64,000 bases of DNA from Haliotis cracherodii (lineage: Eukaryota). The notes beneath the pieces were generated by a model. It was not told the origin of the DNA. It worked only from the letters and a program-made list of their open reading frames with translations, and did not search any database. Where the stretch lies: NCBI RefSeq assembly GCF_022045235.1, contig NW_027266269.1:7626001-7690000 (forward strand), written 5' to 3'. Made by a program: the position numbers and the translations under genes. The stretch's first letter is position 1, and each line of letters begins with the position of its first letter. Shown here piece by piece: positions 6,726-52,838 of the stretch.

Positions 6726-9700
6726 CTAAATAGCATTTTTCGATTTTGGATATTTGATCTGCACTCGTTTGATGAGGCTGAAATCAACATCAAGGGTGAT
6801 GGCCTCGTGAAGAGGGATCCTTACTGGAGCATCCAACAGACTCTTGTCATCAACAGACATCTGAAAGAGACACGAACCAGTTCACTTTACAAATCAGGCC
6901 ACACATTCCCATCATGTTTGTTGTAATTTTGATTCACACAAACATTAATAGAACAAATATATACATCAACCAGACACATCGTTCATTGATTTCTCAGCGT
7001 AAAAAATACTCAATATATATATCAGCCCTTTCAGAGATGTTTAATGTCAATATATCAAGATTGACAACTGAGATTGACTGTTGCAGAAGCAGATATATTA
7101 TGGAGTAACATAGTCGTTATGTCTCACAAGATTCAGAGGGTTCGAAGTGTCCTCCGTCATGATATAATTGGATATTCACTCACTAACTCAGAAAAAGATC
7201 AAGTCTGCGAGATCGTATAATAGATTACATTTGTATATGTGTATGCACATAAACCCTCAAATTCCTACCTGGAACTCATTATTTGTGATTTTAATGGAGA
7301 GGTTCGACGTCACGTTGGGTGTGAACAGGAAGTCGGGAGAACTAATCTCTTTTTCCCATTGGCTTAATATCCGAGCAGTATTGTAGATTATTTCAGAGAT
7401 CGACCACCGCACAACCAGAAGGAACACCACTCTACTGCTCTCGTTTGCACTCAGACGTACCACAGACCTGAGGAAGAAAAAATATTAGTAATCAGATATT
7501 ATTGACATCATAAGCCTCACTGTAGCATGACCTTCTGATATTGAAGAAGAACTGTCTATTGCTTGTGTCAGACTTAAATAAAGCATTTGTTGGTAATTGA
7601 ACCAGGTGGCCTTCCCATAATACTGTCTTGTCTGACCTGTGGGTACCTCGGTTGCCAGTCGTTAGAGGTTTTTCCAGTTCCTGTTTTTTAGTGACTCTCT
7701 GTCATCGTGCCACAACGGGTTGGATCATTGTGTATACAGACTGCTATGATATGCTCTGATATCGAGAACATTTAGCAGTGTTCACTCAAGCCATATTCAG
7801 TATTTCCAATCCCATCAAGAAGAAATTGCATAAATATTGTAGCATGCTTTTGCAAATGCTGATTACTGTACACTTCACAGTACCTTGCGGCTCCATCACC
7901 AGCTGCCTCCACGATAATCTCCGTACCACTGGACAAGGGAGCAGGAAGAGGCGTACTGAATACGGGCACCTGTTGTAAAGTAGAGAGTGAGCAGGTGAAT
8001 AGATGATAATAACTCGTCGGGGTGGGATTGGGGAGGTTGAATTGTCGTTCTTAATACACGCACCTGTTATAAAGTAGAGAGTAAGCAGGTGAATAGTTGA
8101 TAATAACTTGTCGGGGTGGGGGTTGGGGAGGTTGAATTTGCGCTCTTAATATACTCACCTGTTATAAAGTAGAGAGTGAGGAGGTGAATTTTGCATCACT
8201 AAAAGTGAGCAGGAAGAGGCGCTCTTAATATACGCACCTGTTATAAAGTAGAGAGTGAGGAGGTGAATTTTGCATTACTAAAAGAGGGCAGGAAGAGGCG
8301 TTCTGAATACGGTCAATAAGGTCGGATTTAACTGGATAGAAAAAAATCAACCTTTTGTCTTACGTATTTTACTATAAATTAACATTAAAAACATGAAGTG
8401 ATGTATGTATGGATGGATGTACACACAACTGTTTGGTTTCCAAACATGTGCCACTGTACCTGGTCAACCCAGAGGGTCTGCATGCACCTTCCTACATTAA
8501 CTGGTACGTTGTCATGGAAACATGTGTCTGATGTGGTCGGTAGGTAGGAGAATCCACTGGGACAGGTGACATCAACGTGGGACTGGTTCCTCACCAGCAT
8601 CGATACTGCGTTCAGGACCCGAAACTCAGTGCAGGGAACTAAACATGACATATAAATCAATTATTTCCGAAGCTTCAATGCAGCTTGCGGTACTTAAACA
8701 GTTAACAGTTCTTATGACAAAATGAGTAGCTTTTGGCGATTCCATAGCGAATAGATAACCAGTAGGTGACACGAAAGATCATGAGGGCGTTACATCATAT
8801 GACGTTAATTCAATTTTGGAATAGGACACATATATTATGCTGAATACTTTCATAACAGAAAGCCTAAGGCCTTTAGTTACCCCGATGTAACAGTGATGTG
8901 CACCTACACAGTTTAGTTAATAATTGCTGGGACATTCAAGGCGTGGGTTACACAGGCCTCTATGGTTTACAGTAAATGATGTTTGAGTGAGATAAAGTAT
9001 TTTATAGTATAAATGACCTTGATCGACGTATTTGAAAATAAAAACATACTCCAACGTTTCATTTGACATTTTCACATGCTTCTCCAATTCGTAATGGTTC
9101 ATTTATCATACCGAATGGGATGAACTGACAATTAATGCCTTTGGTATTGCAAACAGGATATGCGTGTGACTATTATTTCATTCAATGTTTATGAGTTGGT
9201 TCTGATTTCAATGGTTCGTTTCACGCACACAGTTAGCTCATTGGCAATTAAAATGCTTGTTGTTGAGTCAACGTATATAGCCTTGTTTTGATCTGTGATG
9301 TTACTGATATATTCGCATTTTAGAGCCCAACCCAAACCATTAGAGTGATGAATTGAGAAATCTTCAGTCAATAAGTATCGATCTCCAACTGAAAACGTCC
9401 ACACACAAACAGACTCTATGGGGCGCAAAAGCCAAGGCATTTATAGATTGGTGATGACACCAGGTGTTCGCAAAACGTTTAACCATAGCATGGTCAACCC
9501 GTTGTACCCGCGCTCGCACAATTTGCACAACAAAGTAAGGGTTTATTTGTTGGTTAACTCTTATGTTAAATATCATTTATTATCGTGTTAAGAAACTTTT
9601 TTCTCCTGTACCGTCGTGGGTGTTTTTTTTTCAGAAATAAATGATGATGATGTTTGTTGTTCGATGCCGCACCCAGAATAATGCTTGATTAACACACACA

Positions 9701-10711
9701 TACAAGGAAGTAAATAGGCCTTTATGGCTGACCCTGTGTTACTTTCAGTGCTAAACGTACACACAAAATCATAGAAAGTAATTATCAAAGGATGTGAAAT
9801 GCATCTTAAATGTAAAAGTAAAATACTATATTTCAAATTAAATTCATATGTTGACACATGAACAGATTTACTTATCCAGATTGCTCTGACTTATATGCCA
9901 ATAAAGTTTGACTGAATCTTATCAACCAAATTGATGTTCCTGTGTGTGTTGTGAGGCCTGTAAATGGATTACAAAGAAATAAGTTTATGGTGACAAACAT
10001 GTTGTGAGGTCAGGAATGTCCTATTTGATATTCATAGTGCGATCCTTGGATCCTATTGCAAGAGGCTTTTTGAAAGAACTTTTAGCTGTAGCTGACAAAC
10101 AAAAGTCCAGACTCAATACAAAGTTTTGAGCCCCCAGCCCCCACAGACAAACCACCAACCACCCCAATCTCACCCCCCGAACCCACCCTGGAATATCAAA
10201 TGTCAGTTCCGAAATAAAAACTGGGGCAATAAATTCTATAAATTCAATACTGAAAAGAACATAACACGTATTATGATATAATATGCTTTATGATAATTAA
10301 GTTGCATGTAAATGTAAAATGTAATGTAACATTTCAGAAAGACAATAACCATTAGAATGTCAGTAAATGATATAACCGTGTTATAACGAAAGAACATTTA
10401 CCTGCATAATACTGCCAGCCTGCCTCTTGTTCACCCCCAGTGATGGAACATGAATAGTACAACCGACATCCTTGAGAGGTTGGATTGTACAGCACCATGT
10501 TGCACTGCAACTCATGGAAACACATCGACAGGCATGTAGCCTTGTCAGTAACACTGTGTTCAGTGATGAAGGTGTCATTAAACATCTGTCCATCCAAACT
10601 GACATGATGGAGAAATGTCAGATTGCCACATGACTGAAAAGCTGAACTGTAGGTAAAGGTAACGGTAACGGTAACAACAAGCTGAACAAATTCCCACACA
10701 GCCATTCTCAT
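6726..10711 (-). CDS. Secreted PAN/apple + Cys module + galectin-like domain protein (~302 aa, 5 exons)
   Basis: Exons 10711-10402, 8638-8460, 7969-7884, 7467-7269, 6860-6726. All introns GT-AG with matching phases (1,0,2,0); 909 nt open frame. Hydrophobic N-terminus MRMAVWEFVQLVVTVTVTFTYSSA. PAN Cys pattern CLSMCFHELQCNMVLYNPTSQGCRLY. C-terminal VPVFSTPLPAPLSSGTEIIV...VVRWSISEIIYNT...QWEKE...FLFTPN...IKITNNEFQMSVDDK...VRIPL follows the galectin beta-sandwich pattern (recognised by eye). Confidence 0.8.
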
Positions 10712-11569
10712 GCTTCTCGATTCTGGGAATAGTTCCAGGCATCTGGAGAAGGAGGATAATAACAGTGTGGTAATTGGTGGTATGACAAAGTATCAACAAG
10801 AAACTCGGTTACGTATTTAACATGTTAATTGGCTCTGTTCGCTAACCGATCACTGAAATATTTATGGAGTCTTGGAGGTGAAGTGGTCCTGTCATGTGGA
10901 TCCTTGAAATATGTTTTGTGCTTCACCGAGTTTATCATTTGTGAAAGAATTGCTGATAATGAGGCACACTGCTTGGCATCAATGTTACAAGTTTTGATTA
11001 TGAAATCGATTATTTCAGTCTTTTTAACTACTGGAGTATTCCTTGCATTACAGATGCAGTCGGGGCTGCATTAAGAAGAGAAGCCACTGGGACGTCGCAC
11101 GACTCCTGATTTTTGATAACGTCTCAATGGTAACAAACAATATGCGCCTCGGTCTCCATAGTAACAAAACAAGCACCACGGTCTCCATAGTCTCGATAGT
11201 AACAATATCAAACTGGAATTACAGTAAGACATTCAGTGTCGGTGACTGACGTGGTTCTGAAATGAAAATGATCCGTCAATGCTAGAGACGCAACTGGTTT
11301 TGTAAAGAAAATTTCAATGCAGAACAAATACCTCGAGGAGTGCCACAGGGGAAGGCCACATTGTGTGTTGTTTGTATCTGGCTTGACCAGGTTTTTTTGG
11401 AAGAGAAGACAGCATGTCACAATTAAATGGTATACAAGGCTTGGGCGACGAGCGCATCCTTGTCACTAATAATTGTGTTACCGTAAAAAATATTAGAAGC
11501 ACTATTTGGTGCTAAAATACATGTTACTACAGAATGTTACTCCTCAAGAATAGACAGGGTTGGTTGGGT

Positions 11570-14209: not shown

Positions 14210-14570
14210 ACATGAAATTTCAAGCTAGTATCTTGAAATTTTGAGAAAACAAAATAAAAACAAATGGCCCTAAAAGGCTTCTGTAGGCATGTGGAGATAG
14301 CAGGGTTGAATCGATATAAGTTGAAATTTCAAGATACTCTTTTGAACTTTCAAGATACAGAAGATGAAATTTCAAGATACAACGTTGGGATTTGTCTTTA
14401 TATCTTTTTCATGAAATTTCAAGATACTACGTTAAAATTTTAAGATACTACGTAAAAATTTCAAGATACTAAGTTTTTAGAGACAATTTTAAAATACATA
14501 CTCAGTTGAAAATTCAAGGTTATTATCTTGAAATTTCAACTGATGTATCTTGGAATTTTAATCCAGAAGC
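14210..14570. repeat. Foldback-like cluster of GAAATTTCAAGATAC repeats in both orientations
   Basis: About 10 direct and inverted copies are visible. Confidence 0.65.
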
Positions 14571-14958
14571 TTGCGGTACAATAATGGTTGAAAGGGTGCT
14601 GGCAGCTTAAGTCAAATTAAGGGAAGAATAGTATGCTCTTTCGAAGGAAAACAAATGTTTTATGGACAATCGAGAGCAGTGAAAAAACGGCTTCCTTCAA
14701 TACTTCTTAATCTACATATTCCTTAGTCATTAATCATGACAAAATGATTAGCTACTAAAAGCTAATGGCATTTGTGACATTTGTCTTGAAAGTTTGCAGG
14801 TTTCTTTGTGTGAGTAATTACTTTCAATGTATTATTAATTGTTTGAGTGCTCACACTGTTTCTCGGATTTCGGCTGTTATTAAGTATGTTCTAACCTTTC
14901 ACGTTTCTACTGCGCAGTCACCTGTACATACTTCTATACCAGAAACACGGATCCTCCC

Positions 14959-16569
14959 ATGATGTGGGGTATGTTGTATGCGTGGCTCCCGTTGACGTGT
15001 AGCCTGTATGGTATCGAGGGGAGGACCTCTGTTGGTATCAGATTGTGCAGAGAAGGATGCGGAACACGAATGTTAGATCAGTCTATGAAGATGATCACCT
15101 TTGTCTGCCATTTGAACACAGAGGCCAAACGCGAAACTGGAATTTCTGACAAAAACAACGAGGTGGGTGCAAGCAATGGAAAAGTAATCATAAATGTATA
15201 ATAATATGAGAAAGTTTAATATCATGCACATGAAAATGAGAGAGAACAAAATTACATTGAAGTACAACTTGTTCCGCAGTGGTTTGTGTGGAGATCCTTG
15301 CTGCCTTTGTGGTAAACATGTGAAAACTGTATCATTACTTCATGGTAGCTATGGGAATATTCTTTGCAATGATGTATGACAAAACAACGTATTGCTATTG
15401 ATTGGATCTTATGTGGCAATGACAATGTTACTCTTACTCGAAATGTGATATCACCAAACAGTGTAATTCTTCATAGTAAGGACCTGTGAACATCCGGGGT
15501 AGAGTTGATCTTCTAGTACCCATGCTTTTCGTACAGGCGACTAATGGGATTGGGTGGTCAGGCTCGGTGACTTGGTAGATGCATGTCATCTTATCCCAGT
15601 TGCGTAGATCGATGCCCATGATGTCAAACACCGGATTGTCTGGTCCAGACTCAATTATTTAAATACCGCCGACCGCATTGCTAAACAAACAAACACATAT
15701 ATTTTCCTTGTCTTCATTGAAATTCCTGCATTCTGATTAGCTAAATTGGGGTCATGTTGTAGCATTCATTTCCAAATGAATGTAAAAATATGCCACGCCC
15801 ACCGAATCGAACTACTTTTATTGTTAAGGAATGTCGGAGAATCCAAATATTACAGCCGAGGTTATTCCCTTTCTGCTCAAGTGTATTCGTCATGCACAGG
15901 ACACAGAGCGAAAGTCCTGCATATTCATTGTCCAAACAATCCTTGGAGACCGAAGGCCGAGAAGGAATGAGACGGCAAACGTACAGGCTCGCTCACAGGA
16001 TGTTTTCCCGCTCGCCCCGGTTCCACAACTTTATGTCTTCGGTTTCTTTTCCAACTAGCATGTTTCCAACTCTGTCCTCCCGTTCTCACGGAACTAATGT
16101 CTGAATCCGGCGGTAGCTGACCATATCATTTGAAATAGCCACCTTCTCCCGGACACATTTGTTCCGGCTCGTGACAGTCTGATTGATTTTTGCCTCTTGT
16201 CTTGATTGACAGGTCCTATGAACATTGTTTTGATCTTACTCTCCGTAAATTGGCTTCTGACTTTGTTGGCGTGTCAAGTTACGTGCAAGTTAAAAAATAA
16301 CCTGATTCATGTTACGCCAAAATATCTATTCCTACACCTTGAATGTTTATCAATCTCGTCATTTTTGTCTGCTTTGATATATACAACTTTTTTTGTTTAA
16401 ACTAATGTAGATAAAACATGTTTTCGTTGTCGAACTTAATTATAAGCATTGATTGTGTATTTTTTTCGGTTCATTGAGGTATGAATCTGCTACATACAGT
16501 TTGCACATCGGAGTTTCAAACAACAACGAACCGAAAAAACCTTATTTAGCGAAAAAATACACAGTCAAT

Positions 16570-16630
<61 letters not shown>

Positions 16631-19600
16631 CTGCAGGATTGTAAAGGTTATTCTTGCAGTGAATGAACATTTACTGTTGACAGAAACACGGCAACGTTTC
16701 CCAGGTGACGGGAATAACATGCATGAGCTCTACCCATCATGTGGAGCCTTGGTGCGTATTGGGTAAGTAGACTTTGTTGCAAATCACTTAAACACCCAAC
16801 AGGCAGTACTTAATCAAAGACTTCGGCATTTGGAACTCACTGGTTCAAGGCGCGGCAGCCTCATGTTCACAGTTCCGGCCCTTAATTGTACAGGATCCGG
16901 TGATTGTTTGGTAAAATAATCAATTAAAGTTATGTGTTTATGTTTCATCAAAATGACGTCTACTATGTACTTCAAACTGATTTTTCCTGCAATATATACT
17001 CATAGTTAAATGTTATTGCGATAAAGAGAATAGGTTAAAATTTAGTGGCGGTGATGGAATAATTATGATAAATGGAAAGTACACTGTCTGAAGAGAGGGT
17101 AGTCCACATGAAGAGCCGTATGCAATGGAGTTATGTCTCTCGAGGGAAGTTCACCACCATGCAGGCCTGACACATTCACTTCATTGAGGACACTAACCGT
17201 TGAAGGAACTTGGGAGTGGCATTCCGAATCTACGGATGCAAAAGCAGGAGCTCTATTTCATCCAAAACATGCCAGATTTTGAAATCCTGAAGGCCAGGCG
17301 AACACATGAACATATACTGCAGCTTAACTTAAACAGCATGCGGTCTGGCGTTATCTAGCTGCAATGTCCAGGGACGTTCTGCTGTCAAAATGGTAAAGCT
17401 GACGTCTGCACAATTTGATCCCGGTATCTCAGTGCATACAAATTCCTTATCAAGTCCTTCCTCTAGCCCTATCTCAGCCCAGGTTATAACGCCATCACCT
17501 CCAAAGTGATCACATGGCGTGATACAACGTTCGTCTCGACGTCTGTAGACATCTGTCCTGCCATCAGATCGGCGAAAAATGAAAAATGACTGGGCAACGA
17601 AGAGGACCCTTCTCCACTGACATGCTGTTCACCACAAGCGTTGTCTGCGCCACTGAGATGTCGACGTTGATGTTCCGCGGAATGGATTGGGCGTCTGACA
17701 AACGTGGCTGGTGCGGATGCTGTAGAAGTGGTCGGTTTGTCCTCGAAGATAGGCCTCTGTTGCAAAGGATGGTACCGGCTGCCAGAGTTGCTGTCTGGAA
17801 CCTGTGTCAAAGATGCCTGGTTTGAACCCATTTGTCTTGAAAAAAGGGTTTTCACGTGTGGACGGCCACTACAGGCTCGGTCTCCGACGTGTAGATGTGT
17901 TTTTGTCGCTAACGTCACCACAAGTGTCATATAGAACGTTGAATTGACGTTCGACATCACGCTGTGAGGTACCAGATTCAAGCATACCCGTGGCTCACAT
18001 TTTGTCATTTTCACTTTGGCGTGGCATTGTAAAATGTCATTATACGACCAAAAAAGTCTCTACACTTCAAGCTTAGATTGGAAATATCTAGCCTTTGATA
18101 AATGACATTTGAGGTCATTTCCCTCCACAAAATTTGCAATACAAGCAATATTTGTTAGTATGCATAGCTTCGGCTTTTTCGAACACGTATTCCCTGGTTC
18201 AAATTAAAACCTATTAACCTTTGTAGCGAAAGAAACCAACGTCACAATGACTGTCTATGAGTATATTAAGCAAACATGATGTTACATAGATCTAGTACCT
18301 GTTCACGTTGGTGTGAAATGCAACCTTTCAATGTCAAGCTGACGCCTCATGATAACAGTACAATTGTATCCACAAGTTATTAACTCCAAGTTGAAGGGCA
18401 AAACCGGAAGTATAATACAGAACCTCAATTTTTGTACTAGTCAAAGTTTGCTAAGGATCACCGCTTTAAAAGGGAATACGTCAAATTGTGTGCATCTGTT
18501 GGAATAGCCAAAGGCAATATCCCATCCCAATCTTGATTGAACCCCTCCCATAGCGGTCATGTTCAGCTATGTTGGAATTCTTAAATCTTTGTCTTCGCCA
18601 CACTTTCGGGAACAACAATCTGTCTCTGACGTGTGTTTTTGTCAGTTGCTTCATCACAAGTGTTATATAGACAAGACAGCATCTAGATTCATCAGTGCAA
18701 AGTACTGGCGCCTTTTCCAGGTCTGTCCAATCTTCAACCCAAACCAAACGTGCCTGCCTGTGAAGTCGGGTCAGTGGGGTGCGAATGCATGCCAACAGTG
18801 ACTGGCGTCAGCCTCACAGGTCATTTCTTAGTGTGGTGGCAGTCACGACGTGATGATGCAATCAGGAGAAATTTTGCAGTGTGGTGGAACGATCACAAGC
18901 ATGGGATGATGATCCAAACGTCTGGTATCAATTCCATGCTTTACTGATCACACTGTAACACACAACACATTTGCAACATGACGTTGTGTTGACCCAGTTG
19001 TCAAACAACGTCTTTGACGTTGAGGGGCATAAGTGCATCAGTTGTTGCAATCCTTAGTAGCATATGTTGTTGTGCTCTCTGATAATGATGTGAAACGATT
19101 CTTTCACGACACATCCAAACAAAGGTTTTCAAGCACCTCGTGCATATCGTACTCATCACTGCATGTCTCTGTCAAAACTTGAACTTCAGCAAACTTTGAG
19201 TAGTATATAATAACAGAAGGGACTGTATATTTCTATGCTAGCAGCGTAATAATATATTTGCAGGTGAACATAGGAACTGTTTAACATCTGTACAAGGTGA
19301 ACATATGGTCAGAGTAACGTCTTTACAGAGTAAACATTTGGCAATGTAACAACTTTATATAGTGAACATATGGGCAATGTAACATCTTTACAGGGTGAAC
19401 ATATGGGCAATGTAACATCTTTACAGGGTGAACATGTGAACAATGTAACATCTTTACAGGGTGAACATATGGACAATGTAACATCTTTACAGGTTGAACA
19501 TATGGACAATGTAACAACTTTACAGGGTGAACATATGGACAATCAACATCTTCACAGGGTGAACATATGGACAATGTAACATCTTTACAGAGTGAACATA

Positions 19601-22135
19601 TGGACAATGTAACATGTTCACGGGGTGAACATATGGGCAATGTAAAATCTTCACAGGGTGAACATTGGGTCAATGTAACATCGTCACAGGGTGAACTTAT
19701 GGACAATGTAACATCTTTACATGGTGAACATATGGACAATATAACATCTTTACAGGGTGAACATATGGACAATGTAACATCTTTACAGGGTGAACATATG
19801 GACAATGTAACATCTTTACAGGGTGAACATATGGACAATGTAACATCTTTACAGGGTGAACTTATGGACAATGTAACATCTTTACAGGGTGAACATATGG
19901 ACAATGTAACATCTTTACAGGGTGATCATATGGGCAATGTAACATTTTTACTGGGTGAACATTTTACGGAGTGGACATAGAGGTGATGTAGTATTGTGAA
20001 CATATTCTCAATGTTTACAGAGTGAATGTAATATGTAAATATAGTGACAATGTAACATTTTTTCAATTTGAACGTTTCAGAAATCGAACATCTTTACAGG
20101 ATGAATATAGTGACAATGTCACATCTTTCGAAAGTGAACGTTTGTGATATCGAACATCTTTACAGAGTGAATATAGTGATAATGTGTCCTGTTTGCAGTA
20201 CAGTGCAGGGTAGTCCACAAGAAGGGGAGTCGGCGTCTTGAAGGCAGGTCTCCGGGGCAGTACAATACCCCGGTTGTATCCAACACAGAGTACAGCTGTA
20301 CAAGACGAAGGCTTCCCAACGTGTCCCGCTGCATCACGGGGAAGGGAGGAGGCATGGAAGAGGGGGATGAAAACACCGACAGCAGCGCAAAGAAAACTCC
20401 AGAGAAAGAAGCAACGGCCAAACCAACAGGTGTACATCAACAGAACAGCTTTTATTAATATGCATGTGCATGACTGGTGTGTAGTGATCCGAAATCGTAA
20501 CTATCGTGAAAGATCTAATACTATGATNNNNNNNNNNNNNNNNNNNNNNNNNNNNNNNNNNNNNNNNNNNNNNNNNNNNNNNNNNNNNNNNNNNNNNNNN
20601 NNNNNNNNNNNNNNNNNNNNNNNNNNNNNNNNNNNNNNNNNNNNNNNNNNNNNNNAGAGCCAGGATATTTTTCCAGTCACCAGATTCGGAATATCAAAGA
20701 TGCTTTACTTACCTCACTCGTGAAAGGTGACCTATTAAAATTCTAAATCAAAGAGGAAAAAAACACTGGGTTGTTTTGTACTGTAGTCATTTTGGCATGT
20801 AGTGATTTTCGAAGGATACCAATAAACTTGTTACATATTGTCAACAGTTTCACAGTATCATGATTTTGGAAATTTAATTCGTAATACACATCAATATGTG
20901 AAAACCAATTCTGCCCCTGGTATCAATATCAATACTTTTGATTTTTCTAGGTTACATGGAGCTACAAGCTGGGAAGGACAAGATCCATGTAAAGCAGTAC
21001 AACATATGTAAGACTTGGGACCAAGCATCGCAGCAGTGTAGGACGGACGGGGGGCATCTCATAAAGACAGATACAAATGACAAGCTAAAGGCCATCTACT
21101 CTTTGCGTAAGTTACCAAGACTACAACAAATGAGCCTATGCTTTTCCGACCGACCACTTNNNNNNNNNNNNNNNNNNNNNNNNNNNNNNNNNNNNNNNNN
21201 NNNNNNNNNNNNNNNNNNNNNNNNNNNNNNNNNNNNNNNNNNNNNNNNNNNNNNNNNNNNNNNNNNNNNNNNNNNNNNNNNNNNNNNNNNNNNNNNNNNN
21301 NNNNNNNNNGAAAAGGAGTTTTTACCCGCACAGATGTCACCCTTACCATGTGAGCTTGCCTTCCCTTCCACTGATTTACCCACCCGCCAGAAACCAAGGA
21401 GAGCAGTGAAGCTGCCTCATCTGTCTCATATTTACATCTATGTGTAAAGATTCAGAGTGACATAAAAGTCAACAAGGGACGGCGTTATTTTTCCCTGTGT
21501 GTTTGATCAGGGTTACTGCATTCAAAGGTTTTTGTAAAGTGTTCGAAACGTTTGAGGGTGGACATGTTAGGTACCTTTAATAATTTCTGTCAGCAACCAA
21601 AATGATGTCCGATGCATTTCCCTGTTTTAACTTGTACGACATGTCCCCATTATGGATATGGGGAAATGTGTGGATCATGTGATATATATCAGTTCTATAT
21701 CAGATATACGTGACCCACACTGGAATAGGGAGACAGCAGCAGATGTGATATATACCCTCGATATATCAGATATACAATACCCACATTGGATAGGGGGAAA
21801 AGAGTAGATAATGTAATATATACCCTCTCTATATTCGTTATGCATGACCCACAATGTATAGGGAGACGGGAGCAGATGTGATTTATACCCTCTCTGTATC
21901 AGAAATACATGGCCAACACTGGATAGGATTAAAGGATCGTCATGATGATGACAATTACATCTGGATTGACGGACTACCTCTGAACTTCGAAAAATGGGCT
22001 GTGGGTCAACCAAGCCACAAGAGTAAGGACGGACTGCAGGAGAACTGTGTTGAAGTTGGTCACAAAGGCTTTTTTGGGTTGTTCTGGAATGACAGATCAT
22101 GTGATGGATTACTACCATTCTTATGTCAGAAATAA
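14959..22135 (+). CDS. Secreted C-type lectin (perlucin-like CTLD) with putative N-terminal degenerate PAN and Cys modules (~307 aa)
   Basis: CTLD exons 20951-21106 and 21903-22135 are firm: TWDQASQQCRTDGGHL, HWIGL, WIDG, WAVGQPS, ENCV, WNDRSC, FLCQK; phase-1 join. Putative upstream exons 14959-15183 (SP + GIRLCREGC...VCHLNTE), 16684-16762 and 20199-20429 join in frame with phases 0,1,1. These are less certain: the donor at 20430 is weak and an N-gap lies at 20528-20655. Confidence 0.7.
15483..15695 (+). mobile_element. SINE family A
   Basis: Similarity to the family. Confidence 0.75.
15720..16250 (-). mobile_element. Possible Crypton (DUF3504-type) remnant
   Basis: Minus-strand fragments WNRGERENIL and DNEYAGLSL...LEQKG resemble the Crypton/KCTD1-like motif; heavily decayed. 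Confidence 0.35.
16573..16627. repeat. (TA)n microsatellite
   Basis: Visible. Confidence 0.95.
17080..18060 (-). mobile_element. Degenerate Tc1/mariner element
   Basis: VGDRACSGRPHVKT resembles the Tc1 GRPR/HTH motif; downstream sequence resembles decayed transposase. Boundaries approximate. Confidence 0.55.
18435..19205 (-). mobile_element. Internally deleted Tc1/mariner transposon with terminal inverted repeats
   Basis: TIRs TACTAGTCAAAGTTTGCT (18435) and AGCAAACTTTGAGTAGTA (ends 19205). Transposase remnant PLTRLHRQARLVW...VLCTDESRC...VWRR...EHDRYGRGSI. Confidence 0.8.
19255..20190 (+). repeat. 33-bp minisatellite (GGTGAACATATGGACAATGTAACATCTTTACAG), ~20 good copies plus degenerate flanks
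   Basis: Directly visible tandem array. Confidence 0.95.
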
Positions 22136-22382
22136 GCGTTCAGTTATCGACAAACAGCTTCCGTTGTCTTTGGGTTCTGTATTCACAGACATACGAATAT
22201 GAACAATCCCACAGATTTGACATGGTTTCGTACACGTTTATAGCTGACCTCATGAAAAGCTGTATTTACATGGTAGTAGAAACCTGAATTACTAGGTTAA
22301 ATGTATGTGGTGCTTTTTGTAGTTTGTTTGTTTGTTTGTTGTTCACCGATTTGTGAATTACATGTATATACATATGTTCTGT

Positions 22383-22610
22383 TTTGTTCGTTTGTTGTTT
22401 AAGGCCGCACTCAGCAATATTCCAGCTATATGACGGCGGTCTGTAAATAATCGAGTCTGGACCAGACAATCCACTGAATGACATCATGAGCATCGATCCA
22501 CACAAGTGGGATATGAGGACATGCATCAACCAAGTCAGCGAGTCTGATCACCCGATCTCGTTAGTTTCCTCCTACGACAAGCAAAGTCGCCTTTAAGGGC
22601 AAGCATGGTT
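22383..22610 (-). mobile_element. SINE family A
   Basis: Reverse-complement similarity to the family. Confidence 0.8.
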
Positions 22611-23212
22611 TTGTAAGATAAACTGTCAAACTGGGTGTACAATATAACATAATGGACTTCTTAATGATTCATTTATTGTGCAATAAATCACAACACTCTT
22701 CATCATTGTGTTTGAAGGCTGGTATTTTTGTTCTTTCTTCCACAGCTTCAAAACACGCATTCTTTTATTATTATTATTTTCAGGACATGGTGTGCAGCGA
22801 ACAATTTCATTGTCTCATTATTAGATAATTTATCTCGTTGGAGAATTTGAAAAGACGTGACATATACCAGGTGAAAAGAAAATTTGTAATCTGTAATTTT
22901 GTTTGCAAACAATCCAGGAAATCTATGATTTGAGCATAATATCAGTTGCCATGACAACCTGTTTAGTTTGAAGACCTTGGAATATATAAAACATGAACAT
23001 CACTGAGATTTTTGATAACTCATATTCCACTAAAATATTCTCCGATTGTGGTCTGTCAGTCAGAAGTATTAAATCACAATAACCACATCTGACCGATACA
23101 ATTAATTTTACGTGCGGTGTGGAACAAAACCTTGCTTGGCTGGCTTTCTCCTTATGAGAGGTTCATGCTTGATGACTAAGGAGATCGGTTAATCTTTGAA
23201 AAATCAAATGAT

Positions 23213-43978: not shown

Positions 43979-46316
43979 ATGAAGTCACTCGTTCTTGCTG
44001 CTGTTGTGTTGGGGCTGTTTATCGCAGGTAGTTGGATCAATTAGTAGACTTAGTCACTTTCCTTTCCATGTCATGTCGGGTTGTAATGTTCGTGATTGTG
44101 AAACTTGAATTCTTCAGGTGTGTAAATTTTGGCATGTGGTAACGCTATGTCTGGTGGCATGTGGTCCTTTATACAGCACACATGTAACAAATCAGGTGAA
44201 AATATGCTAGACTGACGAGTTTTTAGGGCCTTGGTCCTGCCACGTTTCTCTGTAGGCAATTGACCTGATTCGAAATATACGTCGGTTCACCCAGAGATGA
44301 AATATTTGTGAGTGAGTTTATGCTTTACGTCACATCGGCAAAATTTCAGCCATATCGTGAAGAGAAATTATACATTATTTCTATCTATATTTAAATTAAA
44401 TATTTTTATTTAAATTAAATTTAAAAAACTGTCATCGATGGACAGTAAAATACCTAGAATTTCACAGATTAATATTTAAAACTAGCGTATAGCCATGAAA
44501 AGGCATCACTCCATGAAACAGTACAATGTGGGCTATAGATCGCCAGCATCTGAAGGTAGATCACCACTGATTGGACAAGATGGTACTGTGTCTGGTATCC
44601 TTAAGCACCTCACAGGCAGCTTATACTGCCCAGTGAGCTGAGACACTGTTGCACACTTATCATTGATTTGGGCAATAATGTGGCGTCATGAGCTTTATTT
44701 ATGATTATTATGAGTATTTATTGTATGATCTTTTTTTAGTTCATTTAGATTGGATTCGACATGGTACATATAGACTTCTTCATATTTGCAGTAGTACATT
44801 CCCATACATTGAAACGACTAACATAATATTTAAAACCCGTGAAGATCCGGGGTAGAATAGGTCTTCAGCAACCCATGCTTACCGTAAAAGGCAACTATGC
44901 TTGTCGTAAGAGGCGACTAACGGGATCGGGTGGTCAGGCTCGCTGACTTGGTTGATGCATGTCATCGTCTCCCAATGCTCATGGTGTCGATCACTGGATT
45001 GTCTGGTCCAGACTCGAATATTTACAGACTGCCGTCATATAGCTGAGTGCGGCGTTAAACAACAAACAAAAGAACTTGTTTTTTTATGGCACAGCGGCAA
45101 GACATAAGAAGAAGTAAAGACCACTAATTCCCCATACCCATCTCTCTGAGACAAGGGAGTGATCTGACTAAAAGTCTAGTTTCAACCCATGTCGAACTAG
45201 GTTGGAATTATGGAGTTATATTTTGCCTGGACTAACGAGTCTATGCATAGTTCAATTAAAATTGCTTAAAGAAATCGACATCCGGTGCGTTAACTGCCGT
45301 GCAGATTTCGGTTACAGGATTCGCAAATCAAGTGTACCGACAACTTAGCGTCAACAGATATTTTTTAAAATCTTTACATGTTCTAATCAAGGTGCTCACG
45401 CGATTTGATGCACTTCGCGATGTACGACCTGTTTTATTACGATATAGATTTTGATTATCGAACAGATAATCTTGACTGAGGGCCGCCATTTTATTTGAAG
45501 TGTAAGTCATATGAGAGGTGGAATCTGATTGGTCAATAGGAGGGACTTAGGAGGGACATAACTCGAACTAGCCTCAGGTGCGAGCCCAGGCATTCCAGCC
45601 AGTTCGGCATGGGTGCAAATAGGACTTTTATGGTCAGTTAACTCCATTGCCTTGGGAAGAAATCAAAATGTGTTCCAACACAACTATATGCTTTCATTTC
45701 CGTTAATTTGTCACAAATTAAATTCATCCCATTCATCATTTTATTTGTCTGCTGGTAAAATTGCTATGACGCCACACTTTGCAATATTCCAGCTGTATGA
45801 CGGTAGTCTATATGTGAACAAGTCTGGACCAGAGAATCCAGTGATCACGAGCATCGACCTACGCAACTGGGATACGATGACACGCATCAGCCAAGACAGC
45901 AGTGCCTAACAACCAGATCCCTTTAGTCGCTTCTCATGACATGCATGGGTCGCTGAAGACCTCTTACCTTCTTACGACATGCATGGGCTGCTGAAGACCA
46001 ATTCTAGCCCACATCCTAAAATGTTATGTATATCAAGTCAAGAGGAAAATTTGCGCCAGACCTTAGAACACTGTTCCCTTTTAATGCCTCAGTTGTACAA
46101 TTTCCATCAAGGTGTTTTTGTGTCTTCAGTTGAGGGCAGGAATGTCAACGTGTGTCCAGATGGCAGCTCTATAGTCTACTGTTTCGTGGATCCATGCCAA
46201 GTTAGCACATGCAGCAACCCAGAAGCCAAGTGCATGTAAGATGGCTCTCCAAATACATTATTTTCCGAAATATTTCATAACATATGACATTATTAATTTG
46301 TTAGGATTTACAATTT

Positions 46317-49196: not shown

Positions 49197-49317
49197 TTAT
49201 ATCTTTAATATCTGAAGAGATAGTTTTACCACTTTGAATCCTCGACAACTTCGAAACGAATAATTGAAAGGGAGCCCCGTATGTGAACCAAGGATGAGGA
49301 ATATGATGACATGTAGT

Positions 49318-49505
49318 GACTGAGTTGGGTTTAACGCCACAAAGGGATGCCCAAAGGGATGCAGGTCTCAGACGCGTATGGTGCTGACAAAACTAGAAAC
49401 ATAATCGGGGTGAAGCGGGATTCGAACCTACAATCATAGATTTCTGGCGTGCCCAAGGAACACAACTTGGCACAGCTTTAGACGACTGAGCCATCCGTGC
49501 CCCCA
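49318..49505 (-). mobile_element. SINE family B
   Basis: Similarity to the family; degenerate TSD atgatgaYatgta. Confidence 0.75.
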
Positions 49506-49693
49506 TGATGATATGTAACAGTTTTAATAAAAGACAGCTACATGTAATCAGTCAGATAAGTGAACACGTATTGTCTCTTCCACAGACGAGATAGTCATAC
49601 AGACATTGGTACGCCCTGTGTGATATATTTCCAAAAGAATGTAGAGTAAATAAGTACAGTTGTTTCATGCAATAAAATCATAAGTCAAGCACG

Positions 49694-52600
49694 TTAAGGT
49701 ATCAGAACTATCACCTGTCTAGTTGGACTAGCAAGATTAGCTTCTCCTATACGGTACAATTTTGACTCATGCCATAGGTAAATGCATTTGTGTCCCAGAG
49801 AACTTATAAACAAGTCACCTTTGTTCCTTACAATGTTCTTGACCTGAAAATGTAATCTTGTTAGTTTTCTTCTCCTTCTGTTTTTGAACAACCATGATTC
49901 CATGAGATTGGCTTTGTCTTTGTAATAAATGGCTTCTCCATTATCACTCAGAGCTAGACCATGTACTTCATTTGATGATGTTATCTTCAGCAAACCCTGC
50001 CCATCATATCCACACGAGTAGATGTTTCTGCTGGCAGCGACATACACTAGTTCTCGCCTTGTATCAAGGCAAACAGCCCAAAGTTTCGTGCAACATCTGA
50101 TCGTCTTGAAAAATCTCCCATCAGGTGCCATCCTATATAAGCAGGAATGTGGCCACCTCGAACTCAGGAATACCAGCTGCTGAGCATTGTCCACTGCTAT
50201 TGACAGGGCACGGATGTGCGACCTTACAGTAACACTGCCATTAGAATGCAATGAGAATGACCTGATCTTCATTGGCCTTGAAGTAGCCATCAAAAGCTTT
50301 TGGAGTGTTGGCACATATGCCAAGGCAGTGACATATCGTTGATTTATATTATAATATGTTGTGATGGAGCCGTTCGGAAGTTGGAGCGCACGTAATGGCG
50401 TCTTCGATCCCTTCATATAGGGTGCAACCAAGAGATGTGTCTTCTCCTCTGTTCTCCCTGTAAGAATATAATTGTGTTTTATAAATGAATTGACCGTTAA
50501 TATAAATTTCGGTTGGTCCGGTTTTGAATCTTAGAAACAAGTGTGCAATCTTTAAGCACCTGCACATCAGATTCTAATTGGTATTGGTCAACATGACTAT
50601 AAGGAATCAAACCATTCATCATAAGCAAGTAGTTTTTAGTTCCAGCAAAATCAGTACACCACCACCAAGTCATCGGATTTTCTGGTCCATCACTTCATTG
50701 TCGGAAGGCAACAAACGAACATTTTCATGCTAATTGTGTGACTGGCTCACCAGGTGTTTTTTTGTTCAGTTTTCTAACGCCGCATTCAGCAATATTCCAG
50801 CTACATGACAGCAGTCTCTAAATATTCAAGTCTGTACAAGTGAATCCACTGGCTGATTTCATGTGAAGCGACGCGCGTAATAGGGATACGGTGTCAAGCA
50901 TCAACCAAGGTCTGACAACCTGCTCCCGGTAAAAAAATGAAAATGACACATGCTGGGGAAAAAAGAGTTGATAACAGGGAAAGTCTGGCAATGCTTCGTT
51001 TGTTTAATCCCCTAGGACACATTAGTCAGTGTCGATGATATTTTAGAAGAGGATGACCCTTTCTTATTAAATGTGGTTCAGGGTTTCTTTTAAGTTCTTT
51101 TCGGAATAGCAAGAGTTATGTGCGTTTAGTTTGAACTTAAGATCTAAAAAACAATGTATTTCTTATGAAGAAAACGTGACTACAACTCTACATACACACA
51201 ATACACTGGTAACATGTTGCTAACATTCCTGGTAATAAATAATGTGGCACTTTATATGCATTTTGAGTTCTATCATTTCCACATAAACATATATATTACA
51301 TCATTTCCGAGTTCATCGAGAGGGTATGATTTAATGAGTGAGAGAAGAGCTTCGTAATATAGCCAACATAAAGGCAATGTAATTGAGCAAGGTTTTTCAG
51401 AATGCCTCGAGTGTTCCCATTAATACCCGTGTTAATATGTCTATCCAAATGTCCGTCTATTATTAACCATATCATGTCATTATGTTTGAAAACTATCCAA
51501 GTTTATATTGCAAAGGGAAGTCAACAGCTGATTATTATTTCAAATTATTCATCATGTTGCAGTTAGATTTGCTTCAAATAAGTAAAAGAACAAATATTGA
51601 ACACTTACGTTTTATGCATCGAAAGCCTTTTGATCTGGTAAGGACAATCCTAGAATGTCTCTCTGTGCAAAGCTCCTTTCTTTGTGAATAGGATCCGAGT
51701 GTTTTCTAAGACAGACACATCGATTTTACAAATGTATTTATACAAATTACTTAGAATTTTGTAACGGAATCACAAACAAATCATAACCATAATTGTTCGC
51801 CAAATGGTATTTTAATTGTCTTACTGACAAGAGAAAGTGTGTCCTCCAAAGTAGGGGGCATGGGTGGCCCAGACGTGTAAGGCGCCGCGATTCGCTGTGC
51901 AGAGTTGCGTCCCTTGGACGCCAGAAACCTCTGGTTGTGGGTTCGAATCCAAGTTCGCCCCAATTATGTTTCTAGGTTTGTCAGCACCATACCCGTACTC
52001 GTGGGTTTCACCGAAGCGGTAAACGTCTGAGACCTGCATCACTTCGGGCTTTCCTCCCACATTAAGGTGACACGCCATTATATAACTGGAATACTGTTAA
52101 AAGCGGCGTTAAACACAACTCTTTCACTCCTCCAAAGTAACCTCAATTCAGCTTTCATAATCATTATTACACTTCAAGGCGGTGGTGATCAATCGCTGGT
52201 GCTGATATCAGTACTGTCCGAAGGATGCTGAGAATCTTCACGCTGAACCCCTTTTCTGTTTAGATTGAATAGATAAAAGTGGGATGCAAATCTTCCAATG
52301 TGTAATGCCAAAACTCAAGTGATAACTCCAAGTAACAGAGGAGAAACTAATTTGATTCATGTTGAGGATTAGTCAAAGTCATATGTTTTTTCCGACGATT
52401 TAAACATTATTATTTTCAAGCAGACGAAAAAGAAAATAAACTGAAAAAAAAGCAACTGTGAGTAATAGCTGCCATTGCAAGGATATAAATACAAACTCTC
52501 AACTTGTTAAACCTAAGTTTATTTTCGCATGATTAACATACGACAAAGAGGGCTAAATCTGTCCTTAGAACCTCAGTAAAACCTGGTACCTTGCTGATAT

Positions 52601-52838
52601 TCAGATAAACTGCCTCCTCTCCGTTTGTCTGTAGTGGATATTTGGACCATGTAGCTATGCAGGCCAACCGTTTTATCAGAAATACGCAAAAAGTGCAATC
52701 ATCGCAGTGGCCACAATGATCTTTGCACATTTCCAGTCCGACTGGCTGCCTCTCTTGGTCAAATGTTGCCGTGACCACCATTATAAAAGCAGCGCAAACT
52801 ATTCGAAGTCTACAGTCACATCGTCTGTAAGGAAGCAT
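49694..52838 (-). CDS. Secreted PAN-like + YWTD/LDLR-class-B-like beta-propeller protein (~369 aa, 3 coding exons)
   Basis: Exons 52838-52590 (hydrophobic leader, then LEMCKDHCGHCDDCTFCVFLIKRLAC), 51705-51609 and 50457-49694; phases 0,1; 1110 nt open. ~40-aa propeller-like repeats: ALAYVPTLQKLLM, SIAVDNAQQLVFLS...LYRMAPDG, AVCLDTRRELVYVA...IYSCGYDG, GLALSDNGEAIYYKD. Confidence 0.75.
51854..52127 (+). mobile_element. SINE family B with 12-bp TSD
   Basis: TCCTCCAAAGTA at 51842-51853 and 52128-52139. Confidence 0.88.

What the first reader, a model, noticed from the sequence alone, without database searches (positions are those of the whole stretch)
6726..52838. Modular secreted family: one SP-PAN cassette joined to three different C-terminal recognition domains
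Seen: three genes begin with a signal peptide and a PAN/apple-like Cys exon, followed by one or two short Cys-containing exons. They end in different domains: galectin-like (6726-10711), C-type lectin (14959-22135) and beta-propeller (49694-52838). In the latter two, the PAN exon ends in phase 0 and is followed by a short two-Cys exon (phase 0 to 1). Established: PAN, galectin, CTLD and YWTD propellers are extracellular glycan- or protein-binding modules. Inference: an exon-shuffled family with a common adaptor and a variable head, clustered with C1qDC and Cys-rich inhibitor genes, possibly an immune, mucus or shell-matrix recognition locus.
Basis: partly seen in the sequence, partly recalled or inferred. 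Interest (0 to 1): 0.8.

Follow-up and report, generated by a model that had tools for sequence, protein, structure and literature searches.

The report
Two abalone PAN-fronted secreted gene families
Two of the three genes are real abalone genes for probably secreted proteins with a PAN/apple front, one ending in a galectin-like domain and one in a YWTD propeller, but they belong to two separate gene families, and the third (C-type lectin) gene shows no PAN front.

Summary
The genome is black abalone (Haliotis cracherodii, xgHalCrac1).

Gene 1 (6726-10711, minus strand) is an intact five-exon gene of 302 aa. It reads hydrophobic leader, PAN, a 4-Cys Sushi-like exon, then a galectin fold.

Gene 3 (49694-52838, minus strand) is an intact three-exon gene of 369 aa. 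It reads leader, a 4-Cys "mini-PAN", a 2-Cys exon, then a six-bladed YWTD propeller (AlphaFold2 pLDDT 90; Foldseek TM 0.80-0.87 to LRP6, LDLR and nidogen).

These are two separate families. Each is multi-copy with a fixed tail: at least 32 and at least 57 first-exon matches in the genome. The PAN exons end in different phases (1 against 0), the linker exons differ, and the two profiles are not significantly alike.

Gene 2 has a real two-exon C-type lectin domain, and both assembly gaps lie outside its coding sequence. Its proposed "PAN" first exon is a genomic singleton with no PAN signal, and nothing shows that it is spliced to the lectin exons.

The wider idea partly holds. PAN exons are very common in this genome, and another abalone gene joins a gene-1-like PAN directly to this propeller at a phase-1 intron.

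Among seven close gene-3 paralogs the PAN part is conserved (dN/dS about 0.26), while the propeller evolves at about 1.0.

The scan has already noted PAN-propeller arrays and PAN-Sushi-galectin genes elsewhere in this genome.

The parts
10402..10711 (-). Gene 1 exon 1: start codon, hydrophobic leader and PAN/apple domain. It ends in phase 1 just after the motif GWQYYA.
   Evidence: Pfam PAN_1 at E 2.4e-6, above the cut-off. Donor GCAG|GTAAAT. 32 matches in the genome.
8460..8638 (-). Gene 1 exon 2: 60 codons with 4 Cys, phase 1 to 0, with a Sushi/CCP-like Cys pattern.
   Evidence: Borders read. Cys columns are conserved in paralogs (alignment A4). The only PDB profile hits are CCP modules, but at E 0.7-3.2, which is not significant. 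No Pfam match.
7884..7969 (-). Gene 1 exon 3: first strands of the galectin-like domain, phase 0 to 2. Its acceptor is the last copy of a tandem repeat.
   Evidence: Sequence and borders. Tandem repeat 7950-8309. The homologous exon is present in paralog L044.
7269..7467 (-). Gene 1 exon 4: core of the galectin fold, phase 2 to 0.
   Evidence: Pfam Gal-bind_lectin at 24.4 bits against a 22.1 cut-off. Paralog L044 at 8e-7 and L041 at 0.0016.
6726..6860 (-). Gene 1 exon 5: last strands of the galectin-like domain and the stop codon.
   Evidence: Acceptor ...tttcag|ATG, stop TAG. Homologous exons in L044 and L041.
52590..52838 (-). Gene 3 exon 1: start codon, hydrophobic leader and a 4-Cys mini-PAN (C-x3-C-x5-C-x11-C). 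It ends in phase 0.
   Evidence: 57 matches in the genome. Alignment A1. 4 of 17 members match PAN_1 or PAN_4. Best PDB profile hit is MIC4 apple, E 0.0026. The donor sits at the same place in 18 of the 19 copies checked, GTA in 16 of them.
51609..51705 (-). Gene 3 exon 2: 32 codons plus 1 base, two Cys, phase 0 to 1.
   Evidence: Conserved in more than 20 paralogous loci. Borders ...cttag|AAAAC and AAAAC|gtaagt.
49694..50457 (-). Gene 3 exon 3: six-bladed YWTD-type beta-propeller and the stop codon, with a phase-1 acceptor.
   Evidence: AlphaFold2 pLDDT 90.4, 24 strands. Foldseek matches LRP6, LDLR, LRP4 and nidogen at TM 0.80-0.87, E about 1e-13. 146 matches in the genome. 1047 relatives in the protein library.
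14959..15162 (+). It is not shown to be PAN and not shown to be an exon.
   Evidence: No Pfam match. Only itself in the genome. A 16-residue resemblance to the gene 3 family. Absent from a six-frame profile scan of the window. No contig of four public runs lies on 15050-15449.
16705..16762 (+). Unsupported.
   Evidence: 1 of 11 candidates from a mechanical scan. Not similar to gene 3 exon 2. No match in the two closest lectin paralogs. No contigs on it.
20951..21106 (+). Gene 2 C-type lectin exon A, phase 1 to 1.
   Evidence: Pfam Lectin_C positions 3-36, E 7.8e-4. Borders read. The same exon is present in paralogs L045 and L046.
21903..22135 (+). Gene 2 C-type lectin exon B with stop codon (phase-1 acceptor), carrying QPS and WND motifs.
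   Evidence: Pfam Lectin_C positions 38-107, E 5.5e-11. Sequence. 58 matches in the genome, the closest at 51% identity.
20528..20655 (.). Assembly gap 296 bases upstream of lectin exon A. Not read.
   Evidence: Contigs of related abalones cross it with 96 letters between the flanks.
21160..21309 (.). Assembly gap inside the intron between lectin exons A and B. Not read.
   Evidence: Exons A and B join in phase and cover the Pfam model without a hole.

Best explanation
The window, from black abalone scaffold C6 at 7.63-7.69 Mb, holds members of two different, separately expanded families of probably secreted mosaic proteins.

FAMILY A (gene 1): leader plus a full PAN with a GWQYY tail, a Sushi-like 4-Cys exon, then an altered galectin fold.

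FAMILY B (gene 3): leader plus a 4-Cys mini-PAN, a 2-Cys exon, then a single six-bladed YWTD propeller. Gene 3 sits at the edge of a tandem array that runs from 7.68 to 8.6 Mb.

Both are most likely soluble binding proteins. The conserved PAN part would serve as a constant anchoring or oligomerising module. The C-terminal head would bind the ligand: glycan-like for the galectin fold, and protein or peptide for the propeller, as in LDLR, LRP6 and nidogen. The function is inferred, not shown.

Both families arose by old shuffling of PAN modules at phase-1 introns, followed by tandem duplication of whole genes. They do not come from one shared cassette at this locus.

Gene 2 is a two-exon C-type lectin domain gene whose 5' end is unknown. 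The ORF at 14959-15162 is probably not its PAN exon.
For: SPECIES
- RefSeq H. cracherodii proteins lie on a contig of 40,864,218 bases, which is the length of C6.
- The published assembly is 1,182,252,637 bp in 81 scaffolds, against 1,182,234,246 bases in 80 contigs here (PMC9709981).

DOMAINS.

GENE MODELS
- GT-AG borders and matching phases close frames of 302 and 369 aa.

FIXED ARCHITECTURE WITHIN EACH FAMILY
- 48 of the 57 gene-3-type first-exon matches have a propeller-exon match 0.8-4.1 kb downstream on the same strand. I counted this by hand.
- The 2-Cys exon lies between them.
- RefSeq models of H. rubra (P0007, P0023, P0030) show the same layout in one protein. P0007 matches the exon-1 profile at E 6.9e-12.
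- Gene-1-type PAN exons are followed by the Cys exon and galectin-like exons in paralogs at 78% and 40% identity.

DIFFERENCES BETWEEN THE FAMILIES
- Different exon phases and linker exons.
- hhalign E 0.25 between the two profiles.
- Each profile finds only its own exon in the window.

SELECTION
- Among 7 close paralogs the mature mini-PAN has dN 0.039 and dS 0.149.
- The propeller has dN 0.120 and dS 0.125, and all seven frames are open.

GENE 2.
Against: - No RNA evidence was obtained for any junction. The public runs that were laid are contigs of related abalones about 94% alike. They run unspliced across the exon A acceptor.
- Gene 3 and its close paralogs were not found among called proteins. 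With a propeller dN/dS near 1, some copies could be decaying.
- Secretion rests on reading the N-terminal hydrophobic stretch. No predictor was run.
- The mini-PAN fold could not be modelled from exon 1 alone (pLDDT 55.9).
- A PAN that scores weakly against both family profiles exists (P0027/P0152: 17 and 13 bits; hhalign E 2.2e-4 and 0.003). The two PAN types may therefore be nearer kin than the direct comparison shows.
Confidence: 0.7

Rival explanations
1. One reading: one exon-shuffled family in which the same leader-PAN cassette is joined to galectin, C-type lectin and propeller heads, with gene 2 as a true member.
For: - The core Cys spacing is identical in genes 1 and 3 (C-x3-C-x5-C-x11-C).
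- Gene 2's ORF shares a 16-residue stretch with the gene 3 family (BLASTP E 0.001; hhalign E 0.0097).
- It ends in phase 0, like gene 3 exon 1.
- A phase 0-to-1 two-Cys candidate exon at 16705-16762 keeps the frame.
- PAN followed by a C-lectin is reported for gene models in Biomphalaria (PMC13712769).
- A PAN_1 match lies 3.5 kb upstream of a lectin match at C7:33.85 Mb in this genome.
Against: - Gene 2's ORF has no Pfam match, lacks the third core Cys, is a genomic singleton, and is not found by either family profile in an unbiased scan.
- Nothing like gene 3 exon 2 lies in gene 2.
- The closest lectin paralogs have no PAN match within about 2 kb upstream of exon A.
- No contig of four runs lies on the two proposed 5' exons, although contigs do lie on the nearby intron and exon A.
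- Genes 1 and 3 differ in exon phase and linker exon, and hhalign gives E 0.25.
Confidence: 0.12
2. Gene 2's ORF at 14959-15162 is a decayed leftover of a family B first exon, left by a partial duplication at the edge of the tandem array. It is not part of the lectin gene.
For: - It lies about 38 kb from gene 3, the first array member, and shares the stretch around the first two Cys with the family.
- Leftover PAN first exons beside abalone lectin genes were reported by another follow-up of this scan (s1-823199). I did not check that claim.
Against: - No DNA-level similarity to 27 family B loci, beyond one 26-base chance match.
- No remains of exon 2 or the propeller lie downstream.
- A 16-residue match is weak.
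Confidence: 0.1
3. Gene 3 and its close neighbours are young duplicates drifting neutrally. They are functionless or nearly so, rather than a diversifying recognition repertoire.
For: - Propeller dN/dS is about 1.0.
- Gene 3 and its close paralogs were not found among called proteins, although other proteins of this species are in the collection.
- At least four array copies show stops or split frames.
Against: - All seven compared copies keep 253-261 open codons at dS about 0.12.
- The attached mini-PAN is under purifying selection in the same genes (dN/dS about 0.26).
- Splice borders and phases are kept in copies down to about 25% identity.
Confidence: 0.15

Closest known systems
VIgL family of the snail Biomphalaria glabrata (FREPs, CREPs, GREPs; PMC5433772)
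   Same: These are gastropod plasma proteins built from a shared N-terminal module and alternative C-terminal heads (fibrinogen, C-type lectin, galectin). They form multi-gene families linked to recognition of parasites.
   Different: The front module there is one or two immunoglobulin-fold domains, not PAN. No YWTD propeller head is reported. Binding to parasites and expression are shown there; nothing is shown here.
PAN/Apple plus C-lectin gene models in the Biomphalaria LG11L resistance-associated region (PMC13712769)
   Same: A PAN/apple module sits in front of a lectin head, in a region of tandem duplications in a gastropod.
   Different: The head there is a C-type lectin. In this window the lectin gene is the one member whose PAN front could not be shown.
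YWTD (LDL-receptor class B) propellers of LDLR, LRP4/5/6, megalin and nidogen
   Same: Same six-bladed fold (TM 0.80-0.87, rmsd 2.3-3.9 A). The repeated strand motif ending in D is still visible, and the domain is extracellular.
   Different: About 12-20% identity. No match to Pfam Ldl_recept_b. It is a single propeller in a small 369-aa protein with a PAN front. The window gene has no LDL-A repeats, flanking EGF or membrane anchor.
PAN/apple modules of apicomplexan microneme proteins (MIC4) and factor XI / prekallikrein
   Same: These are the best profile hits for both abalone PAN families. They share the Cys core.
   Different: E-values are weak (0.0026-0.14). The gene 3 type lacks the outer N-to-C disulfide of apple domains.
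RefSeq 'uncharacterized protein' models of Haliotis rubra, H. rufescens and H. cracherodii (XP_046561077, XP_046581742, XP_046562149, XP_046350454, XP_071097903)
   Same: Same family and layout as gene 3. The last two accessions join a PAN with a GWxxYY tail directly to the propeller.
   Different: They are distant paralogs, not the window's gene. None has a name or a tested function.

Membership tests
PAN/apple (Pfam PF00024 and clan) | Profile match above the curated cut-off | tested here: met
   Gene 1 exon 1 scores 27.7 bits against a 21.4 cut-off. Gene 3 exon 1 has no match of its own, but 4 of 17 aligned paralogs match PAN_1 (best 7.9e-6) or PAN_4. Gene 2's ORF has no match at E up to 1, so the feature is not met for gene 2.
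PAN/apple (Pfam PF00024 and clan) | Four-Cys core (two nested disulfides) | tested here: met
   C-x3-C-x5-C-x11-C is present in genes 1 and 3 and is invariant or nearly so in their families. Gene 2's ORF has C-x3-C-x15-C, with the third Cys absent.
PAN/apple (Pfam PF00024 and clan) | Fold: a helix packed on a curved antiparallel sheet | tested here: inconclusive
   The AlphaFold2 model of gene 3 exon 1 shows one helix and a hairpin at the right places, but pLDDT is 55.9, so no fold search was made.
Galectin (Pfam PF00337) | Profile match above the curated cut-off | tested here: met
   Gene 1 exon 4 scores 24.4 bits against 22.1, on profile positions 31-97. Paralog L044 scores 29 bits.
Galectin (Pfam PF00337) | Canonical sugar-binding residues (H, N, R ... 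N ... W, E, R) | tested here: inconclusive
   By eye only, on the exon 4 translation. W and E of the W-x-x-E motif, one N and one R seem kept; the others seem replaced. No residue-level alignment was printed. Another note of the scan (s1-826360) says the same.
C-type lectin domain (Pfam PF00059) | Profile match and the four canonical Cys | tested here: met
   Exon B scores 43.6 bits. Exon A scores 20.6 bits, below the cut-off on its own. Together they cover profile positions 3-107. The Cys of QQC, NCVEV, RSC and FLC can be read. WND is present, and QPS replaces EPN/QPD.
YWTD / LDL-receptor class B propeller (Pfam PF00058) | Six four-stranded blades with closest structural neighbours among YWTD propellers | tested here: met
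   24 strands, pLDDT 90.4. The 40 rows shown among the top 50 PDB matches are all LRP6, LDLR, LRP4, ApoER2, megalin or nidogen.
YWTD / LDL-receptor class B propeller (Pfam PF00058) | Sequence-profile match to the class B repeat | tested here: not met
   No Ldl_recept_b match; only a weak THOC3-propeller match. A profile search of PDB sequences gave ROS1 and nidogen at E 0.3-0.6.
VIgL (FREP/CREP/GREP) | N-terminal immunoglobulin-superfamily domain(s) | tested here: not met
   The N-terminal exons match PAN, and no Ig family appears. The proteins may work like a VIgL protein, but they are not members.
Secreted protein | Cleavable signal peptide | not testable with these tools
   Met followed by a 14-20 residue hydrophobic stretch can be read in genes 1 and 3. 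No signal-peptide predictor is on hand.

The most novel reading that the evidence does not exclude
The PAN-propeller array that starts at gene 3 (dozens of tandem copies on C6 at 7.68-8.6 Mb, with more at 10.6, 33.8 and 37.5 Mb) is an abalone recognition repertoire. A conserved PAN anchor carries a YWTD propeller whose binding face is driven to diversify. That would make it a propeller-based counterpart of the snail FREP/VIgL system, possibly relevant to disease resistance in this critically endangered species. Together with PAN-Sushi-galectin and PAN-lectin genes, PAN would then be the general front module of abalone soluble receptors.
Probability: 0.3. Interest if true: 0.7.

Novelty: new variant of a known kind. 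Interest (0 to 1): 0.45.

Why it matters
Mosaic soluble receptors built from a shared front module and swappable binding heads are a known invertebrate strategy, for example the snail VIgL family.

A small, probably secreted protein made of PAN plus a single YWTD propeller, amplified to dozens of tandem copies, was not found in any paper I could search. In these copies the front is conserved and the head evolves fast. RefSeq calls its relatives "uncharacterized".

Black abalone collapsed from withering syndrome, a bacterial disease (PMC9709981). A large, fast-evolving family of probably secreted binding proteins is therefore a reasonable candidate for immune studies.

For annotation, the window shows that gene 3 and its close paralogs could not be found among the called proteins searched. 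It also shows that the 5' end of the lectin gene is unresolved.

Tried and rejected
SEARCHES THAT GAVE NOTHING USABLE
- Word-index protein searches with the propeller exon and with lectin exon B found nothing. The length window and the need for shared words limit these searches, so the blanks say little.
- AlphaFold2 on gene 3 exon 1 alone gave pLDDT 55.9, so no fold search was made.
- The look-up of sequencing runs: no run holds more than 0.30 of the sampled words of 21903-22500. No holder is on record as RNA. Part of that stretch is a common short repeat.
- Read laying on 15050-21049 with X1, X2, X6 and X19: the contigs are about 94% alike, so they come from relatives. They run straight across the exon A acceptor. 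None lies on 15050-15449 or 16650-17249, and there are no splice-like joints with GT..AG ends. This gives no support for gene 2 and no proof against it.
- Search for a gene-3-like exon 2 in gene 2: none found.
- DNA comparison of 14500-15450 with 27 family B loci: none found.
- Mechanical scans for phase 0-to-1 two-Cys exons gave only chance-level candidates.

IDEA REJECTED
- I had considered that the propeller was an NHL/TRIM type, because of 500-aa open frames on C3. The structural neighbours shown are all YWTD propellers, so I rejected this. The C3 genes were not examined.

I dropped the mapping of variable columns onto strands and loops.
- Spliced (joined) proteins were never built, searched or folded.
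- Gap letters were not read or filled.

Full report
SOURCE OF THE WINDOW
The window is G000:C6:7,626,001-7,690,000 of a 1,182,234,246-base genome in 80 contigs. RefSeq proteins of Haliotis cracherodii sit on a contig of 40,864,218 bases, which is exactly the length of C6. The published black abalone assembly xgHalCrac1 has 1,182,252,637 bp in 81 scaffolds (PMC9709981). I take the genome to be black abalone.

GENE 1 (6726-10711, minus strand)
- The first exon translates to a Met, a hydrophobic stretch and a domain that matches Pfam PAN_1 (E 2.4e-6, 27.7 bits, cut-off 21.4). It also matches PAN_3.
- Reading the DNA gives five exons with GT-AG borders and matching phases:
  - 10711-10402 (phase 0 to 1)
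  - 8638-8460 (1 to 0; 60 codons, 4 Cys)
  - 7969-7884 (0 to 2)
  - 7467-7269 (2 to 0)
  - 6860-6726 (stop)
- Together they give 302 codons.
- Exon 4 matches Gal-bind_lectin above the cut-off (24.4 against 22.1 bits).
- The 4-Cys exon has a Sushi-like Cys pattern that is kept in paralogs. Its only PDB profile hits are complement-control modules, at non-significant E-values of 0.7-3.2. It has no Pfam match.

FAMILY A IN THE GENOME
- The PAN exon has 32 matches.
- The galectin exon has only 5 matches at single-sequence sensitivity. Four of them have a gene-1-type PAN exon upstream on the same strand.
- A 78% paralog (L043/L044) shows all five exons in order.
- A 40% paralog (L041) shows PAN, the Cys exon and a galectin-like exon (Pfam 0.0016).
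- Gene 1 is therefore a member of a family with a fixed layout.

GENE 3 (49694-52838, minus strand)
- Exons are 52838-52590 (83 codons, phase 0), 51705-51609 (two Cys, phase 0 to 1) and 50457-49694 (phase 1, stop). Together they give 369 aa.
- The last exon, aligned with ten paralogs (A3), folds with pLDDT 90.4 into 24 strands.
- The 40 rows shown among the top 50 Foldseek matches are all YWTD propellers of LRP6, LDLR, LRP4, ApoER2, megalin and nidogen (TM 0.80-0.87, E about 1e-13). Pfam's class B repeat does not match.
- The first exon has no Pfam match of its own. It does align with 16 paralogs around an invariant Cys core (A1).
- Four of those members match PAN_1 (best 7.9e-6) or PAN_4. The profile's best PDB hit is the apple-domain protein MIC4 (E 0.0026), followed by factor XI apple.
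- I accept it as a reduced, 4-Cys PAN.

FAMILY B IN THE GENOME
- The first exon has 57 matches and the propeller exon has 146.
- By hand count, 48 of the 57 first-exon matches have a propeller match 0.8-4.1 kb downstream on the same strand.
- The 2-Cys exon lies between them in more than 20 loci.
- The donor after exon 1 sits at the same place and phase in 18 of the 19 copies checked, and reads GTA in 16 of them.
- Most copies form a tandem array on C6 between 7.68 and 8.6 Mb. Gene 3 is the first member of that array.

RELATIVES ELSEWHERE
- A profile search of 1.84 billion representative proteins found 1047 relatives of the propeller.
- RefSeq models of H. rubra (P0007, P0023, P0030) have the same layout in one protein: leader, mini-PAN, 2-Cys piece, propeller. 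P0007 matches the exon-1 profile at E 6.9e-12.
- These are independent gene predictions of the same layout.
- Other relatives carry a coiled coil in front of the propeller (H. asinina). A scallop protein matches the propeller profile in seven stretches.
- All are named "uncharacterized".

ARE THE TWO PAN FRONTS ONE CASSETTE?
- They share the core spacing C-x3-C-x5-C-x11-C.
- The gene 1 exon ends in phase 1 after a GWQYY tail and is followed by a 60-aa 4-Cys exon (phase 1 to 0).
- The gene 3 exon lacks that tail, ends in phase 0, and is followed by a 32-aa 2-Cys exon (phase 0 to 1).
- Profile-profile comparison of the two families gives E 0.25.
- In a six-frame scan of the whole window, each family profile finds only its own exon.
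- I conclude that they are two PAN subtypes in two families, not one cassette.

SHUFFLING OF PAN FRONTS IS REAL IN THIS GENOME
- A Pfam PAN_1 search gave 1077 first-look candidates. All 150 that were scored passed the cut-off.
- The RefSeq gene for P0152 at C6:23.63 Mb has a separate leader exon and a PAN exon with a GWLRYY tail that ends in phase 1. That exon joins directly to the phase-1 acceptor of a propeller exon.
- Its PAN matches Pfam PAN_1 (measured on its H. rufescens cluster-mate P0027). It scores weakly against both family profiles.
- The propeller exon, the Sushi-like exon and lectin exon A all have phase-1 acceptors. From general knowledge, this is the phase class that favours shuffling of extracellular modules.

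GENE 2 (14959-22135, plus strand)
The C-type lectin domain is real.
- Exon A is 20951-21106 (phase 1 to 1; Pfam positions 3-36).
- Exon B is 21903-22135 (phase 1, stop; Pfam positions 38-107, E 5.5e-11).
- The two closest paralogs fetched, at about 50% identity, have the same two exons.

The assembly gaps do not break the coding sequence.
- Gap 21160-21309 is in the intron between exons A and B. The exons join in phase and leave no hole in the domain.
- Gap 20528-20655 is 296 bases upstream of exon A. Contigs of related abalones cross it in line with the flanks, with 96 letters between.
In principle that gap could hide a short exon.

The proposed first exon (14959-15162) is not supported.
- It has no Pfam match at E up to 1.
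- It has no second copy in the genome.
- It has only a 16-residue resemblance to the gene 3 family.
- It does not appear in the profile scan of the window.
- It lacks the third core Cys.
- Joined directly to exon A it is out of frame.
- A candidate linking exon at 16705-16762 (two Cys, phase 0 to 1, donor GTAAGT) would keep the frame. It is 1 of 11 candidates from a mechanical scan. It has no counterpart in gene 3 or in the lectin paralogs.

No PAN match lies in the roughly 2 kb upstream of exon A in the two paralogs. One paralog has a 557-aa repeat-rich open frame there. The window has a 33-base repeat of 21 copies, open in both strands, at 19263-19962. The true 5' part of gene 2 may therefore be something else.

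RNA EVIDENCE
- No run holds more than 0.30 of the words of 21903-22500, and none is on record as RNA.
- Four runs were laid on 15050-21049. The contigs are about 94% alike, so they come from related species.
- They run straight across the exon A acceptor (X1 record 7, X6 record 29, X19 record 14).
- This is weak evidence against conserved exons there. The tool itself warns that holes prove nothing.
- No junction of any of the three genes is shown by RNA.

SELECTION
- I compared seven close array members: gene 3 and L047-L052, with their first exons.
- The mature mini-PAN has dN 0.039 and dS 0.149.
- The propeller has dN 0.120 and dS 0.125. Some 20-codon windows are above 2, and all frames are open.
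- A conserved front with a fast-evolving head fits a recognition repertoire. Relaxed constraint is not excluded.
- Several other array copies carry stops or split frames.
I dropped that step.

SURROUNDINGS

LITERATURE AND EARLIER NOTES
- I found no paper on PAN-propeller or PAN-galectin proteins in abalone.
- The nearest described system in function is the Biomphalaria VIgL family, where an Ig-fold front carries fibrinogen, C-type lectin or galectin heads (PMC5433772).
- PAN/Apple followed by a C-lectin is reported for gene models in a Biomphalaria resistance-associated region (PMC13712769).
- Other notes of this scan on the same genome list PAN-propeller arrays, PAN-Sushi-galectin genes and PAN-lectin arrays. 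I used them as leads only.

LIMITS
- Spliced proteins were not joined, searched or folded. Everything was done exon by exon.

VERDICT
The window holds two separate families plus a lectin gene of unknown 5' end, not one cassette with three heads.

Noticed in passing
window 7950-8309 and 21653-21927: Tandem repeats are built from a splice acceptor plus the first bases of the downstream exon. Units of 79-95 bases lie before gene 1 exon 3. A 65-base unit in 3.8 copies lies before lectin exon B. In both places the last copy is the acceptor in use.
   Followed up: partly
window 19263-19962: A 33-base minisatellite of 21.3 copies is open in both strands and lies about 1 kb upstream of lectin exon A. 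The lectin paralog L046 has a 557-aa repeat-rich open frame at the matching place (L046:103-1773). Gene 2 might carry a repeat stalk instead of a PAN front.
   Followed up: partly
G000:C6:23629677-23633287 (L053/L054): The RefSeq gene for P0152 (XP_071097903) has a separate leader exon, a PAN exon with a GWLRYY tail (phase 2 to 1), and a propeller exon joined directly, with no 2-Cys exon. It looks like a hybrid of the gene 1 PAN type and the gene 3 head.
   Followed up: yes
G000:C6 7.68-8.60 Mb, 10.60-10.94 Mb, 33.80-33.94 Mb, 37.48-37.55 Mb; C23 56.82-56.86 Mb: These are tandem arrays of PAN-propeller genes spaced roughly 7-25 kb apart. At least four copies carry stops or split frames (near 8060180, 8121141, 8336840 and 33898295). 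Gene 3 and its close paralogs were not found among called proteins.
   Followed up: partly
G000:C3 39.17-40.46 Mb and 17.33-17.79 Mb: There are dozens of open frames of about 500 aa whose C-terminal half matches the same propeller at 24-30% identity. They are probably single-exon relatives with another front, and coiled-coil fronts are seen in H. asinina proteins P0006, P0010 and P0011.
   Followed up: no
window 417-641, 1344-1592, 15437-15658, 22269-22547, 27010-27261: A short interspersed repeat recurs here. In four public abalone runs its word depth is 40,000-660,000, against about 5-35 for single-copy parts. This inflates any word-based search that includes it.
   Followed up: partly
window 23180-25540 (+), 57881-60511 (-), 17332-18810 (-): Retroelement open frames that I judged reverse-transcriptase-like by eye lie at the first two places. 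A broken open frame that looks like a Tc1/mariner transposase lies inside the proposed gene 2 intron. None of these was checked with a family search.
   Followed up: no
G000:C7:33852404-33856222 (-): A Pfam PAN_1 match lies 3.5 kb upstream of a C-type lectin exon match on the same strand. It is a probable true PAN-lectin gene elsewhere in this genome.
   Followed up: no
window 28639-28974 (-) and 45940-46236 (+): Cys-rich open frames with no Pfam match lie beside the antistasin-like exon. They may be further small Cys-rich inhibitor-like genes.
   Followed up: no
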